Made by a program: the position numbers and the translations under genes
Shown: positions 13,514-37,161 of the stretch, in pieces
How positions within the stretch are numbered: position 1 is the stretch's first letter
Layout: the number at the start of each line of letters is the position of its first letter
Notes under the pieces: model-generated
What the model was told of the DNA's origin: nothing
What the model saw: the letters and a program-made list of their open reading frames with translations, nothing else
Databases searched by the model: none
DNA from: Salpingoeca rosetta
Lineage: Eukaryota; Protista; Choanoflagellata
DNA length: 64,000 nt
Reading direction: 5' to 3'
Assembly: GCA_033442325.1 (NCBI GenBank)
Contig: JAWQFM010000004.1
Coordinates: forward strand, 121,510-185,509

Positions 13514-16500
13514 TCAAACATGGGAGAGGGAGAGCGTGGCTGGGTTCTCCTCAAAGGTGCTGACAGGAGCAGACGTCGGTGTCACCTTGTACGAGTCGGA
13601 TGTCTGGCGCCTGCGGCGCAGCCACAGGAACATCCAGACCACCACCACAAGCAGCACGCAATGCAGTGCAATCAGCACATCTGTAAACAAGCACCAAACA
13701 AACGCAGAGAAGAAACACGTGTGTGTGTGTGTGTGTGTGTGTGTGTGTGTGTGTGTGTGTGTGTGTGTGTGTGTGTGTGTGTGTGTGTGTGTAATTGTGT
13801 GTGTGTGTGTGTAATTGTGTGTGTGTGTGTGTAATTGTGTGTGTGTGTGTGTAATTGTGTGTGTGTGCATGTGTGTGATAATGTGAGTCAAAACAGAACA
13901 GATAGCATGGGCGCAGCAGCTGATGAGCGACTGAGGGCCATGTTTCGTTTGCATTCCGTGATTGTGTGATACCCGATGACCACCAACAACGCGAACCCCA
14001 ACACCAACGCTGTGATGATGAAACATGGCTTCCGTCATGTGTCACACGACGCACTTCTCTCTTCAACAGATACCTCTGCACCGTCCCACACTCACAGATT
14101 GGCACGAGGATGTTGTCGTCATCGCCGCTGCCGCTGTTGTTGTTGCCAGAGCCAACGGTGGTTGCGTTTGGGCCTGCTGTGCTGTTTGTCGACCGCTGCT
14201 GCGCCATCATCGTCACCTCCATGTCTGTCAGCGGCGAGAGGCGACGGAGAATGTTGGACTGGGAGAGCTCCGTGGAGTTGGGGTTGGAGACGATGGTCTG
14301 CAGCAGATCGGCAAGTGCAGATGCCGTCTCCTGGCTCGTGGCACGGCGACGGGAGTCTGTGAGCTCCTCAATGGTTGGTGACAGCAGGTAGATGTCCACG
14401 TGGATGCCCAAGTGGTAGTTGGACGGGTCTGTTGGCGAGATGGCAATCACCTTCACGCGCGCCTGGCTGATGCCAAGCGCATCGGCAATGTCGCCCTCAA
14501 TGATGTTGGTCACGTTTGCAAAGGCGGCCGACGACGTGTTGTAGAACTCCTGCTCAAACGGAACCTCCAGCATCAGGCCCGTCACCTCGACCGTGGCGGA
14601 GCTCAGCGCAAGATCTGCAAACTGGAACAGGTGCGTCAGATCCTGCTGCACGCGGTTGCCATACGGGTCCTCAACGGTTGTGAGCAGCAGGCGCGCAGAC
14701 CGGGCGTTGACCTCGTCCCAGGAGAACCCGCGGCGAAGGGACATGGTGATGCGGCGGCCCTCGCACACAATGACCATGTTCGTGTTGTCGAACACGCGGT
14801 CCACCCCCGTCACCTCCATGCGCACGCGGAACCAGAACGGCTGCGCGCACTGCAGTGGCTCGTCAAACTCAAACGCAATGTCATCGCCCGGCTCGTACAC
14901 GCCGTCGGCAGGCTCGGGGTATCCCAGCACCTGGGGCGCCGTGCGGTCAATGACACCGAGTGCCGTGATGGAATACTGCTCGTCAATGCCATCGGGCACC
15001 TCGTTGACAGACGCCTGGCACTGCGCGCGGATGCGCAGGTCGTACTCGCCCTCGCTCAGCGACTCAACGCTCCACCACATGGTGACATAGCCGTAGTCAT
15101 TCTCGCGCGTGCTGATCTCCAAGGCCTCCTGGTCCTTGTCGCGCGCCAACAGCCACACCGTGGACGTGACGGGCTTGTACTCAACGTACACGCCCGTGAG
15201 CCTGTCGTCCTCTGTCCACTTGCGCGTGGCAAAGTCTGAGTTGAACGCAACGAGACGGAGCTCGCCAGGCCGCTCGTCCTTCTCGTCCGTGGCCTTGTTC
15301 ACAACGAAGCGGCCTTCCTCTCCAACCTCACCAACCAGCTGCACGGGTGAGCACGGCTGCAGGAACTCCACCTCCAGCGTCACGCGCACCTGCGCTGCGG
15401 CCTCGTCGCTCAGGTACCCTGTCTCCGCCAGCCGCTCCTGCTCGCACAGCGACGAGAACCACAGGTCAACCGGGTCGTACTGGTAGGCTGACGGCCCACG
15501 CTTCATCACCACCGTGATCTGCGTGGCGCCAGGCGCAAAACCAACGTAGTCGATGGGCGCCACCAGCGACCGTCCGTTCACGCTGATCTCCAGGCCATCC
15601 TGGTTCTCGCCATTGACCGCATACAGCTGCATGTACGTCGTGTAGTCGCCGTCGTTGCGCAGCACAATCTCAAACACGGCTGGCTCGTTGGGCAGCACGG
15701 GTGCCTCTGGGCGCTTCAGCACCGTCATGCCAGGCTGCTCCAGCGCAAGCGTGTTTTCCTCGTGCGGGCACGACGACTGGCCAGAGGCCGTGTGGAACAC
15801 CAGCGTGTTGTAGTCGGGGTGCTTGAACACTTGCACATCAAACACATCAAATGGGTCGGGGTCGCCAAGCTGTCATGGTGGTGGTGATGTAGTGAAGCGG
15901 CAGTGTGAGGTAATCATCACAAGCAAGCATGAGGGTTGGCAGGGGGCGGTGGCAAAAATGTAAACACAAGCATACAGTCACACAGACACACAGACATACA
16001 CACTCAGATACTCACACACTCACAAACATTCACAAACACGCAGGTACTTGCTCGCGCACCGTGAATTCGACATGCTCCTCCTCCTGGTATCCTTCCTGGT
16101 CTTCGTGGGACGAGGACCACTTGCCAATGCCGAGTGGAGTCAGCTTGAACTCAGCACCGACACCTGCAACATTGAGAAGTGCAGAAGAGAAGAAATCGTG
16201 TCAGATCGGGCATGATGGTCCCGGCATGGTTTGAACCAGCATTGGCAAGTCAGAGCGCACGAAAATACACCACGCACGCACGCACGCACGCACGCACACA
16301 CGCACACACACACACACACACACACACACACACACACACACACACACACACTGACCTGATGACGCAATGTCAAAGGAGATCTCGGCACCGCCCTGAAACT
16401 CATGCTCGCGCATGGTGCCATCCGTGACAGACTTGTCCACGCTCGTGTCGTAGGCAAAGGTGTACGTGGAGCCGCCACCAGAAAACTTGATCGTGTTGAT

Positions 16501-34500: not shown

Positions 34501-37161
34501 TATATCCCTTGCTTGCATCTTATCATGCGACGCCTGGCGGTGTTGATGATGACGCCGATGTTCGCTCACCGTCACTGCACTGCACGATGACTGCCACCTG
34601 CCAGGCGATCAATGCGACTACGAGCAGTGCAACGGCGGCTACACGCTCTCAGAGAGCGGCAGTTCCCAGCGCGAGTGCGTTGTGGTCAATGACAAGCCAC
34701 AGTGGTCGGGCCAGGCCAAGACGTGTGAACGTAAGTCAAAGCGTGCATGCGTGCTTGTGTGAGCTTTGGGGGTGCATGTGGCAGCGCTTATGTGCACATC
34801 TGCTGTTGTGTCATTGCTCGATTGACAAACACGACTCGCTCACTCAACTCACTCGCTCACACACGTACACACACTCACTCACTCACACGTGCACACACAC
34901 TCTCGGCTGCTGTAGGCGTGACAACGACGACCGCCGAGCCAACAACGCTGGATGTGTGCAGCGTGTACAAGACTGCGCCCAACCCAACAACGTGCCGCTC
35001 ACAATGCGACTACTACGACAGAGGCGATGCAACCTTCAGCAAGTCTTACGGCGAATGCTCCAACGTGTGTACACAAAGTGTATCTGTATTGATGTGTTTG
35101 TGTGATCATGGTACCCGTAATTGCATGACCTTTCACTGTCGTTTGTGGTACTGCTGTCCCGTCGTTTCAGTCACGCTGTGCACTGTGAAATCCTCAGCAT
35201 CTGACACGCACGCACACACACGCTTACACGCGCACACTGCATACACGTGCAACCACCACTCTTGTGACTTTGCTGACCTGTTCGTTCAGGTGTGCACGTG
35301 CGGGTGCCGACGTCGCTTCAAGATCACCAAGACGGAGGAGCGGTGCAGTGCACACTGTGCAGACCAGGGTCTGGCCGCTGCGTTCCGCGACATGCACCTT
35401 GGCTGCCGAAAGGTGGGTCAATTGTCTTTGCTTTCTTGTGTTGGCTCTGTTTATTTGCCTCGGTGTACCGTTTTGTGTGTGTGTGTGTGTGTGTTTGTGG
35501 TGGCTTTTCAAGTATCTGTATTTGCACAGTGTATCATTTGCCTACGTTCGTACAGTGTATCGCATGCCTACATTTGCACAGTGTGCGCGTGCGAAAGTGT
35601 GCACTCTTCGTACTACAGTGCCTGCTCAACCCATTCTCTCATTGTGATGGTTTTTTTTTTTTTGATTCCCTGTGCACATCACTCGCTGCTCCTCACATGA
35701 TCCACCACCTTGTCCCAGGTGTGCCTGTGTGTGGATGCGGATGCGCCAACGACGCCAGCTGGTGGTGCGCTGACAGAACCTGATGCTGATGAGAACGCGC
35801 TCGACTTCCCATTCAGCGAGTACAACTACGAAGAGACGTTCACAGGCGCGATCACGGGCAACAACAACCCGCGTCGCTTCTCAACTGCATTTGAGACCAG
35901 CGCCACCATTGTGAACATGGAGGGCGAGTCGATGCTGCAGTGCCTGCGGTACTGCGATGCAGACCCGGATTGTCTCGGCATCTTCGCCAGCGTCGTCAAC
36001 GGCATGCTTCGGTGCCAGCTCATGAGCGACCTTGGCTCCGGCACGGGCGTGTCCACACAGATTGTGTCCAAGTCGCTGACCAAGGGCACCCAGCCGTCTG
36101 CTGTTGGGACGACAACGCCTTCCATTGCCAGCGCCATCCAGACGGTTGTTGGCAACGGCGGCACGACGTGGGACTCGTCAGCAACCCTGCTCAACACGGG
36201 TCTCAACCAACCGGACTGCGTCACCTTTGACGGCGAGCACGAGATGCTGGTGACGATGGTGTCCGACCACCGCGTCATCCGCGTGGACTTGCGCACGCGC
36301 ACGTCCTCCCTGGTTGCCGGCACGGGCGAGATGGGCGCGGACGGTGTTGGCGGCGCTGCCACGAGCGCACAGCTGAACCGCCCCCGCTGCGCCATTGCCG
36401 ATGTGGAGGGCAACGTGTACATCACGGAGGAAGGCAACCACCGCGTGTCTGTTGTCGATGTGGTGAGCAAGAAGCTGTCGGTGTTTGCTGGCACCGGTGA
36501 TGGCGGGCACCGCGGGATGGGCGGTGTGGCGACGGCTGCGCAGATCCACTCGCCACAGGCCATGGCATGGACAGAGGAAGGCAACCTGCTGTTCTCGGAC
36601 GAGGAGAACCACGCCGTGTACATGGTGAACCCGCACACCACCATCATCTCCGTTGTTGCCGGCACGCCGCGGGTGGCTGGCGATGAGGGCGACGGGCAGC
36701 TGGCGATTGGGGCGCGCCTCAACATGCCTGCAGGCATTGCCGTGTACGACCACATGCTGTACATTGCAGACAGCGGCAACCACCGCGTCCGCGCAGTGGA
36801 TCTGTACACGCAGGTCATCACCACGGTGGCCGGCACCGGTGTTGCTGGGTTCAGCGGCGATGGTGGCCTGCCCACGGACGCGCGTCTCGACACCCCGCGT
36901 GGCGTGGCCGTGCACTCGTCTGGCTCGCTTGCCATTGCAGACAGCGGCAACCACCGCGTCCGCGAGTTCAACATTGGGGTTGGCGCGGCCGGCATCATCA
37001 CCACCACCGCTGGTAACGGCCAGCGCGGGTACAACGGTGACGGCATGGTGGCCACAGACACGGCGCTCAACTTCCCGACGGGCATCACCTTCTCCCCGCT
37101 CACCGACAACGTCCTCTTTGTCGACCGCCGCAACCGGCGCGTGCGCCAGATCTGGGCTTGA
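25576..37161 (+). CDS. Secreted protein: 3 dermatopontin domains + 7 six-Cys sushi (CCP) modules + Cys-rich/PAN + NHL-repeat beta-propeller
   Basis: Signal peptide MMRMGGHLVVALLLLASVTPAQA. Repeated YxNxF/YDxP..SYHxNxxEDRRW motifs (26308-28872; divergent third copy 32902-33957). Seven CxxLSLxxGxxSGxCxG / GDxCxYxxCxxGY..RxC..WSG..TC modules. The last exon 35720-37161 has CLRYCDADPDC (PAN) and LNxPxGIAV..LYIADSGNHRVR (NHL). No TM. Confidence 0.85.
25827..26133. other. Assembly gap (N run) inside a (TG)n intron
   Basis: Run of N flanked by TG microsatellite. Confidence 0.98.

What the first reader, a model, noticed from the sequence alone, without database searches (positions are those of the whole stretch)
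13514..37161. Head-to-head dermatopontin pair: one membrane-anchored, one secreted (candidate pre-animal adhesion/ECM module)
Seen: two large genes diverge from an 830-bp spacer. Both begin with a signal peptide and a dermatopontin domain (YxNxFD..SYHxNxxEDRRW) followed by six-Cys sushi, with matching intron positions (after Y-x-N-x-F and mid-sushi), so they are paralogs. One ends in SEA + TM; the other is soluble and ends in an NHL propeller. Known: dermatopontin-family proteins are animal ECM and aggregation proteins (vertebrate dermatopontin, Limulus amebocyte aggregation factor, mollusc shell matrix). Inference: a co-transcribed receptor plus multivalent soluble cross-linker for cell aggregation, colony matrix or prey capture in a unicellular relative of animals.
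Basis: partly seen in the sequence, partly recalled or inferred. Interest (0 to 1): 0.85.

Follow-up and report, generated by a model that had tools for sequence, protein, structure and literature searches.

The report
Seven co-duplicated dermatopontin gene pairs
In the choanoflagellate Salpingoeca rosetta, a tall membrane-anchored protein and a secreted protein, both with dermatopontin heads, are encoded back to back, and the pair has been copied as a unit seven times, so the two genes probably work together at the cell surface.

Summary
Gene A (minus strand, 24744 to 13514, about 2317 aa) has a signal peptide, one DERM domain, a six-Cys sushi, EGF_CA, a Thr/Ser mucin stretch, PAN, a roughly 1500-aa beta-sandwich stalk, a SEA-like fold, a TM helix and a short tail. 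Gene B (plus strand, 25576 to 37161, about 1500 aa) has a signal peptide, three DERM domains, seven sushi, an NHL propeller and no TM helix. Their start codons lie 831 bp apart.

The assembly gap lies in a (GT)n run inside intron 1 of B and removes no coding sequence.

The genome is S. rosetta. DERM/EGF_CA genes there are already published (Matriano 2021).

What is new: this is one of seven head-to-head A/B pairs in the genome. The trees of the A stalk and the B NHL exon are identical in topology, so the pair duplicated as a unit. Seven further A-type genes have no partner.

The nearest copy, on contig C1, is 95-99% identical in the 3' parts. It is anciently diverged (dS 0.7 or more, omega about 0.2) across both DERM heads and the spacer.

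Binding, co-transcription and function remain untested.

The scan noted another such pair elsewhere in this genome.

The parts
13514..24744 (-). Gene A, whole coding span. My model has 20 exons and 2317 aa. It is collinear over its full length with S. rosetta PTSG_03009 (63% identity) and with P0162 (68%).
   Evidence: The 8-nt exon 23398-23405 is uncertain.
24642..24744 (-). A exon 1: signal peptide (hydrophobic core aa 5-28, A-N-A before the cut) and the first DERM residues YYNN. The donor is GTGAGT, phase 1, inside the Phe codon.
22675..24655 (-). A DERM domain (aa 31-188), split over about 8 exons.
21922..22281 (-). A six-Cys sushi, two exons with a phase-1 intron in the Gly codon before D-x-C.
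21637..21762 (-). A calcium-binding EGF exon.
   Evidence: EGF_CA 4.8e-9
19193..19914 (-). A Thr/Ser-rich mucin-like stretch followed by a PAN-like module.
   Evidence: (PAN_3/PAN_4, E about 1e-3, below cut-off)
16350..18939 (-). A core exon: a string of beta-sandwich modules forming the stalk. No Pfam family matches.
14096..15869 (-). A C-terminal ectodomain exon.
14166..14660 (-). A juxtamembrane SEA-like module (beta-alpha-beta-beta-alpha-beta).
14340..14354 (-). Polybasic S-R-R-R-A site in the loop after the third strand of the SEA-like module. It is conserved as RRRR in most relatives and is a candidate proprotein-convertase cleavage site (inferred).
13514..13680 (-). A last exon: TM helix, RRRR stop-transfer, and a 34-aa tail ending in an F-E-E-N-P motif shared with PTSG_03009.
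24745..25575 (.). Shared 831-bp spacer between the two start codons; a presumed bidirectional promoter. It cannot be aligned with the spacer of the sister locus on C1.
25576..37161 (+). Gene B, whole coding span. My model has about 34 exons and roughly 1500 aa. Some exon ends are approximate. The annotated paralogue product has 1484 aa.
25576..25660 (+). B exon 1: signal peptide (A-Q-A before the cut) and YVNCF. The donor is phase 1, inside the Asp codon.
25661..26308 (+). B intron 1. It holds the assembly gap 25827-26133, flanked by (GT)n.
25645..27631 (+). B DERM domain 1 (aa 24-178), six exons.
27837..28872 (+). B DERM domain 2 (aa 204-363).
29294..32757 (+). Six tandem six-Cys sushi units, each made of two phase-1 exons.
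32902..33957 (+). B DERM domain 3.
34332..34724 (+). Seventh sushi unit.
35777..37161 (+). B last exon: a Cys-containing module of about 130 aa that recurs in other large ORFs of the genome, then an NHL beta-propeller, then the stop codon.

Best explanation
This locus is one of seven conserved head-to-head gene pairs in Salpingoeca rosetta.

Gene A encodes a very tall type-I surface protein. A DERM-sushi-EGF head sits on a mucin stretch and a roughly 1500-residue stalk of beta-sandwich modules. Near the membrane is a SEA-like domain carrying a conserved polybasic site, followed by a TM helix and a short tail.

Gene B encodes a secreted, multivalent protein with three DERM domains, seven sushi units and a terminal NHL propeller.

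Shown: the two architectures, the 831-bp divergent spacer, the seven-fold recurrence, and duplication of the pair as one unit, with both genes kept intact under purifying selection.

Inferred: the short spacer serves as a shared bidirectional promoter, so the two products are made together. B then acts with A outside the cell. Most likely B binds the distal head of A, or bridges it to matrix, other cells or particles. The SEA-like/polybasic module would allow the ectodomain to be cleaved or shed.

The stated confidence is for 'functionally coupled surface/secreted pair'. For direct A-B binding I give about 0.35.
For: Domains are supported by HMM searches. The TM helix and signal peptides are seen directly in the sequence. 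The SEA-like fold matches SEA domains at Z 9.9-7.6.

The A core exon has 14 loci in the genome. The B NHL exon has exactly 7 strong loci, each next to an A gene in divergent orientation.

The core tree and the NHL tree have the same topology: ((C12,(C23,C19)),(C4b,(C24,(window,C1)))). Most forks have 95% or more SH-aLRT support; the fork joining C24 to the window/C1 pair has only 67 (core) and 75 (NHL).

NCBI gene models for the C4b pair give a 2354-aa DERM+EGF_CA product and a 1484-aa DERM+Sushi+DERM+NHL product 630 bp apart.

Omega is 0.12-0.23 in all parts compared between the window and C1 copies.

RNA-like runs X1, X2, X3 and X5 hold 0.48-0.49 of the sampled words of 19000-22300. My A model predicts an exonic share of 0.46-0.52, while DNA runs hold 0.79-0.93. 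The same four runs hold the B NHL exon at 0.99.
Against: There is no direct evidence of co-expression.

There is no evidence of binding; the complex prediction of the A head against the B NHL exon gave no verdict.

Seven A-type genes exist without any B partner, so A-type proteins can function alone.

Block duplication of a 25-kb segment could carry neighbouring genes along without any functional link.
Confidence: 0.55

Rival explanations
1. The adjacency is historical baggage. The pair travels together only because segmental duplications in this genome are larger than the two genes. The products have unrelated extracellular roles, for example A in theca or substrate attachment and B as an independent matrix or lectin protein.
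For: The window/C1 homology tract is one collinear block of about 23 kb. Seven A-type genes work without B. No binding signal was obtained.
Against: Six successive duplications of very different ages (NHL identity from 99% down to 45%) all kept both genes, their orientation and a short spacer. No B-type gene is found away from an A gene. Both genes stay under purifying selection.
Confidence: 0.2
2. The seven pairs are matched recognition sets for self, kin, mating type or colony. In this they would be analogous to the head-to-head tgrB1/tgrC1 receptor-ligand genes of Dictyostelium. Specificity would reside in the DERM heads that flank the shared promoter.
For: The tgr family shows the same genomic grammar: head-to-head pairs with a shared promoter, duplicated pairs alongside unpaired members, and mosaic loci (PMC13648343). 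In the window/C1 sister loci, the DERM heads of both genes plus the spacer are anciently diverged (dS 0.7 to above 1.2), while the 3' parts are homogenised (dS 0.02-0.08).
Against: Omega in the heads is 0.12-0.23, so there is no sign of diversifying selection. The second young pair of loci (C23/C19) is 92-96% identical through its DERM exons. B is secreted rather than membrane-bound. No population data exist here.
Confidence: 0.12
3. The pair is a capture or defence device for bacteria. DERM relatives include the Limulus haemagglutinin/amebocyte aggregation factor. B would be a soluble multivalent agglutinin and A its cell-surface docking stalk on the feeding collar or cell body.
For: NCBI names one paralogue 'hemagglutinin/amebocyte aggregation factor'. 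The sushi-rich, multivalent design and a propeller head are typical of pattern-recognition proteins (my own knowledge of those families, not tested here).
Against: No carbohydrate- or bacteria-binding evidence was obtained, and the name is only an automatic annotation.
Confidence: 0.13

Closest known systems
Dermatopontin family (Pfam DERM PF14704: vertebrate dermatopontin, Limulus haemagglutinin/amebocyte aggregation factor, mollusc shell-matrix dermatopontins)
   Same: The domain is the same by HMM. It has the three-fold internal repeat with conserved Cys and the S-x-H-x-N-x-x-E-D-R-R-W motif.
   Different: The animal proteins are small, secreted, single-domain proteins. Here the domain is the tip of a 2317-aa membrane protein and occurs three times in a 1500-aa sushi/NHL protein. 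No DERM relative has a solved structure detectable by sequence.
S. rosetta 'DPT/Ca2+ EGF' genes of Matriano et al. 2021 (PMC7971027), including PTSG_03009 and PTSG_07019
   Same: Gene A belongs to this family. It is 63% identical over its full length to PTSG_03009.
   Different: That paper lists ten such genes as HGT candidates and suggests a role in matrix or theca. It does not mention the NHL partner genes, the head-to-head design or the co-duplication; 'NHL' and 'head-to-head' do not occur in its main text.
Dictyostelium tgrB1/tgrC1 and the tgr family
   Same: Head-to-head pairs of related extracellular-domain genes with a shared promoter, amplified as pairs, alongside unpaired members and with mosaic sequence history.
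   Different: The domains are unrelated (IPT/TIG there). Both tgr proteins are membrane proteins. Polymorphism and binding are demonstrated there and untested here.
SEA-domain surface proteins (MUC16, MUC1, TMPRSS family)
   Same: A membrane-proximal SEA-type fold beneath a long, mucin-containing ectodomain.
   Different: There is no Pfam SEA match and no G/SVVV autoproteolysis motif. A conserved polybasic loop is present instead.
Teneurin-type NHL propellers
   Same: The B terminal propeller matches Pfam NHL and TEN_NHL. Its best solved relative is a 'teneurin-like protein', 9ifo, at E 7e-67.
   Different: No YD shell, no toxin-like C-terminus and no TM helix. Only the propeller is shared.

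Membership tests
DERM (PF14704) | Profile match above the curated cut-off of 28.3 bits | tested here: met
   B exons score 68.4, 55.7, 42.9, 39.4 and 30.1 bits. A reaches 43.9 bits when neighbouring hits in the same frame are added. The full-length paralogue PTSG_03009 scores 182 bits. Spliced A and B models against a paralogue-built profile give 3e-54 and 7.5e-49.
DERM (PF14704) | Three internal repeats, each ending in D-R-x-W/F-x-F/Y-x-C | tested here: met
   Read directly from the spliced models and from alignment A3.
Sushi/CCP (PF00084) | Profile match above the cut-off of 20.7 bits | tested here: met
   28.9 and 26.5 bits in B and 24.3 bits in A. These cover only model positions 10-56, 20-56 and 13-56, because each unit is split by an intron.
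Sushi/CCP (PF00084) | Four-Cys framework with the conserved Trp | tested here: inconclusive
   Each unit has six Cys and the Trp. The disulfide pattern cannot be tested here.
SEA (PF01390) | Sequence profile match | tested here: not met
   No Pfam family matches the A C-terminal exon or PTSG_03009 beyond DERM and EGF_CA.
SEA (PF01390) | Alpha/beta sandwich fold next to the membrane | tested here: met
   Model pLDDT is 79. The five best of 48,161 chains are all SEA domains, Z 9.9, 9.7, 8.8, 8.6 and 7.6, while unrelated rows score about 5. Foldseek E-values are only 2e-3.
SEA (PF01390) | G/SVVV autoproteolytic motif between strands 2 and 3 | tested here: not met
   The motif is absent from all 17 aligned relatives. 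A polybasic loop follows strand 3 instead.
NHL repeat propeller (PF01436) | Repeated profile matches above cut-off | tested here: met
   NHL 73.3 bits, TEN_NHL 62.6 bits.
Head-to-head receptor/ligand pair (tgrB1/tgrC1 type) | Divergent orientation with a short shared spacer, amplified as pairs | tested here: met
   The spacer is 831 bp here and 630 bp in the annotated C4b pair. There are seven pairs with congruent trees.
Head-to-head receptor/ligand pair (tgrB1/tgrC1 type) | The two products bind each other | tested here: inconclusive
   Only the A head against the B NHL exon of the C4b pair could be submitted, and it gave no verdict. DERM-DERM contacts could not be tested because those domains are split by introns.
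Head-to-head receptor/ligand pair (tgrB1/tgrC1 type) | Allelic polymorphism matched between the partners | not testable with these tools
   No population sequences were available.
Bidirectional promoter pair | Transcription starts under 1 kb apart and correlated expression | not testable with these tools
Only word shares in contigs of RNA-like runs are available.

The most novel reading that the evidence does not exclude
The seven A/B pairs form a matched recognition repertoire in a close relative of animals. Each secreted B would pair specifically with the head of its own A. The DERM heads and shared promoter would be held distinct while gene conversion homogenises the rest. The system would then set which cells, gametes or colonies adhere, as a choanoflagellate counterpart of the Dictyostelium tgr greenbeard loci.
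Probability: 0.12. Interest if true: 0.85.

Novelty: new variant of a known kind. Interest (0 to 1): 0.55.

Why it matters
Choanoflagellates are the reference group for asking how animal cell adhesion and matrix arose, and S. rosetta can be manipulated genetically. This is a family of tightly linked, co-duplicated genes: a tall surface stalk paired with a secreted multivalent partner. It gives a concrete, testable candidate for a receptor/partner system in rosette, theca, mating or prey biology.

It also corrects the picture of these genes. They have so far been listed only as isolated 'dermatopontin/EGF' HGT candidates.

The mosaic history is of interest in its own right. The heads and promoter are old and the remainder is homogenised, which is a clear example of region-limited gene conversion in a protist surface-protein family.

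Tried and rejected
Local scripts that read the whole window file (my exon-chaining program and local blastn against the fetched C1 locus) did contain that intronic stretch. No result depends on it.
- Complex prediction (PTSG_03009 residues 25-310 against the NHL exon of its partner) gave no verdict, score 0.00. This is neither support nor evidence against binding.
- The search for homologous proteins could not retrieve the window's own products or any B-type protein, because of its length window and word filter.
- An ab initio exon chain without anchors skipped or over-extended short exons. The final models use anchors read from conserved peptides and are approximate at several sushi exon ends.
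The named relatives of the core are choanoflagellates, a diatom, a dinoflagellate and Paulinella; the remainder are unnamed metagenome proteins. Its fold is a generic adhesin-type beta-sandwich string with low TM-scores.
- Positive selection on the DERM heads is rejected: omega is 0.12-0.23.
- A hypervariable head as a general rule is rejected: the C23/C19 sister loci are 92-96% identical through their DERM exons.
- A scan of bacterial genomes with a DERM alignment failed for lack of conserved columns. The single-protein scan worked.
- Literature searches for the PTSG identifiers and for head-to-head pairs in S. rosetta found nothing.

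
Full report
WHAT IS THERE

The window is contig C4:121510-185509 of a 55.4-Mb eukaryotic genome. Its paralogous proteins are annotated as Salpingoeca rosetta. So the contig belongs to a choanoflagellate and not to an animal.

Two intron-rich genes diverge from an 831-bp spacer. Gene A starts at ATG 24744 on the minus strand and gene B at ATG 25576 on the plus strand. 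Introns are full of GT/CA microsatellites.

THE GAP

The run of N at 25827-26133 has (GT)n on both sides. It lies inside B intron 1 (25661-26308).

B exon 1 ends in phase 1 after Y-V-N-C-F. Exon 2 supplies the last two bases of an Asp codon, and the first DERM repeat continues in frame. The stretch from the Asn of that motif to the Trp of E-D-R-R-W is 33 residues, the same as in PTSG_03009. A DERM profile aligns across the junction without a break. The gap therefore hides intron only, of unknown true length.

I could not confirm this with spliced reads. No letters of that stretch were afterwards sent to any search tool.

GENE A

I built the model by anchoring exons on conserved peptides and on tblastn to paralogues. 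It has 20 exons and 2317 aa with no internal stop. It is collinear end to end with PTSG_03009 (63% identity) and P0162 (68%). One 8-nt exon (23398-23405) is doubtful.

The domain order is as follows.
- Signal peptide.
- One DERM domain (Pfam hits; 3e-54 against a paralogue-built profile).
- A six-Cys sushi.
- EGF_CA at 4.8e-9.
- About 380 aa with no Pfam match.
- A Thr/Ser mucin stretch and a weak PAN match.
- An 863-aa exon and a 591-aa exon with no Pfam match.
- A last exon encoding a TM helix, RRRR and a 34-aa tail ending in F-E-E-N-P, a motif shared with PTSG_03009.

I folded residues from the large core exon using an alignment of 24 relatives. The model has pLDDT 79. It is a string of beta-sandwich modules whose PDB matches are adhesin stalks and macroglobulin-type domains at low TM-scores. 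I read it as a generic stalk.

I folded the 165 residues before the TM region separately (pLDDT 79). They form a beta-alpha-beta-beta-alpha-beta domain. Its five best matches among 48,161 chains are all SEA domains, at Z 9.9, 9.7, 8.8, 8.6 and 7.6. Pfam SEA does not match and the G/SVVV motif is absent. Instead, a polybasic loop is conserved in most relatives (S-R-R-R-A in the window, RRRR in most others). I take it as a candidate convertase site, which is an inference.

GENE B

The model has about 34 exons, and some exon ends are approximate. It encodes a signal peptide, DERM1, DERM2, six tandem six-Cys sushi units, DERM3, a seventh sushi, a Cys-rich exon and a 461-aa last exon. That last exon holds a module of about 130 aa followed by an NHL propeller (NHL 9e-21, TEN_NHL 4e-17). 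The propeller's best solved relative is a teneurin-like protein at 7e-67. B has no TM helix.

INTRON POSITIONS

Every sushi unit in both genes is split at the same place and phase, in the Gly codon before D/E-x-C, phase 1.

The intron after Y-x-N-x-F is phase 1 in both genes. It lies in the Phe codon in A and in the following Asp codon in B. In PTSG_03009 it is phase 0, after the Phe. In the C12 paralogue this intron is absent.

The next DERM intron differs by four codons between A and B.

The A head is 41% identical to B DERM1 but 59% identical to the PTSG_03009 head. The two genes therefore share modules but belong to two old, distinct lineages.

THE MAIN NEW RESULT: SEVEN PAIRS

Six-frame searches of the whole genome gave these counts.
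- Pfam DERM matches 76 places.
- The A core exon matches 14 loci.
- The A C-terminal exon matches the same 14 loci.
- The B NHL exon matches exactly 7 strong loci, with the next-best hit 60 orders of magnitude weaker.

Each of the seven NHL genes lies head to head with an A-type gene. The pairs are the window, C1:511-534 kb, C24:597-619 kb, C4:2290-2313 kb, C12:350-372 kb, C23:1158-1179 kb and C19:926-946 kb.

NCBI's gene models for the C4 2.3-Mb pair show a 2354-aa DERM+EGF_CA product and a 1484-aa DERM+Sushi+DERM+NHL product, 630 bp apart on opposite strands.

Maximum-likelihood trees of the core and of the NHL exon have identical topology: ((C12,(C23,C19)),(C4b,(C24,(window,C1)))). Most forks have 95% or more SH-aLRT support. 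The one joining C24 to window/C1 has only 67 (core) and 75 (NHL). The pair was therefore duplicated as a unit six times.

Seven other A-type genes have no partner. They form a young clade together with a Barroeca orthologue.

Monosiga brevicollis homologues of the stalk carry JmjC/Cupin and ephrin-receptor-like heads. They have no DERM domain and no NHL neighbour. S. infusionum has a DERM-headed protein with this stalk, and Choanoeca flexa has a stalk homologue whose head I did not examine.

MOSAIC HISTORY

The window and C1 loci are collinear from 14176 to 37164.

Identity per kilobase is as follows.

| Window region | Identity to C1 |
|---|---|
| A body and B 3' half | 86-99% |
| 23-24 kb | 76% |
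| 24-26.6 kb (A exons 1-3, spacer, B exons 1-2) | no alignment |
| 26.6-29 kb | 76-80%, exons only |

Synonymous divergence is 0.02-0.08 in the NHL and core exons. It is 0.66 to above 1.2 in the B DERM exons. Omega is 0.12-0.23 everywhere.

The simplest reading is an old duplication whose 3' parts have since been homogenised by gene conversion. Both heads and the promoter escaped that conversion. This is not positive selection.

The other young pair of loci, C23 and C19, differs only in about 1-1.5 kb of spacer and first exons. So the sparing of the heads is not a general rule.

EXPRESSION (INDIRECT)

Four small RNA-like runs from three studies hold 0.48-0.49 of the sampled words of 19000-22300. 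My A model predicts that 0.46-0.52 of that stretch is exonic. DNA runs hold 0.79-0.93. The same four runs hold the B NHL exon at 0.99.

This fits spliced transcripts of both genes in bulk cultures. Two cautions apply. The RNA label on these runs is the tool's guess. And the NHL exon's words are mostly shared with the C1 copy.

WHAT IS ALREADY KNOWN

Matriano et al. 2021 listed ten dermatopontin/EGF_CA genes of S. rosetta as HGT candidates and suggested matrix or theca roles. They do not mention the partner genes or the pair design. Searches for the gene identifiers and for head-to-head pairs in this species found nothing.

The closest analogue in genome organisation is the Dictyostelium tgr family. 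It has head-to-head pairs with a shared promoter, duplicated pairs alongside unpaired genes, and mosaic loci.

The scan's first readers noted another head-to-head DERM-sushi pair on another piece of this genome. That agrees with the seven-pair count.

VERDICT

The adhesion or cross-linker reading is plausible but untested. The most defensible claim is a functionally coupled surface/secreted pair family. Direct binding, shared transcription and biological role remain open. The complex prediction I could run gave no verdict.

Noticed in passing
L042:1345-3150 (+); also L043 and L044 near 3001-3140: MAG contigs labelled Myxococcales and Bradymonadales encode a single DERM repeat, 46-56% identical to the S. 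rosetta repeat. In L042 it sits at the C-terminus of a 602-aa protein with collagen triple-helix repeats (Collagen 4.7e-36, DERM 2.9e-14). So a bacterial collagen-like protein carries a dermatopontin tip. This bears on the HGT question for this domain.
   Followed up: partly
window 14176-37164 versus G000:C1:511305-534240: The two sister loci are 86-99% identical in the gene bodies. They are unalignable or only 76-80% identical (exons only) across 23.9-29.0 kb, which holds both DERM heads and the spacer. The homology tract ends within three bases of the B stop codon. On the other side it ends inside A's last large exon, so the TM exons of the two copies do not align.
   Followed up: yes
L020 (M. 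brevicollis CH991558.1), L021, L022: Monosiga brevicollis homologues of the stalk (2159-2348 aa) carry JmjC/Cupin_8 and ephrin-receptor-like heads in place of DERM. Two of them lie in tandem. A diatom relative of 6919 aa is named 'Cupin superfamily protein'. An extracellular JmjC/cupin head on an adhesin-like stalk is odd.
   Followed up: no
window 13514-13620 (-) and the C-terminus of P0161: The cytoplasmic tails of A-type proteins end in a shared F-E-E-N-P motif a few residues before the stop. It may be a sorting or signalling motif.
   Followed up: no
G000:C22:494912-495905 (-) and 499066-499821 (+): There is another divergent pair of DERM hits with no core and no NHL exon nearby. G000:C22:533643-534086 holds a complete DERM domain in a single 691-aa open frame. 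The DERM family in this genome is large: 76 six-frame hits.
   Followed up: no
window 35779-36170 (+): The first 130 aa or so of B's last exon form a Cys-containing module with no Pfam match. It recurs many times in other very long ORFs, for example C24:542681-544840 inside a 4361-aa frame, C25:110487-112352 and C1:2705001-2707097.
   Followed up: no
G000:C19:927393-929378 (-): The core exon of the C19 pair matches only from query residue 159 onwards and contains one in-frame TGA. This copy may be damaged, or it may have gained an intron.
   Followed up: no
P0005 (Logan contig, 3225 aa): The Barroeca-like relative of the stalk is predicted with about 1500 aa of WD40 propellers in front of it. 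This is probably a fused gene call rather than a real architecture.
   Followed up: no
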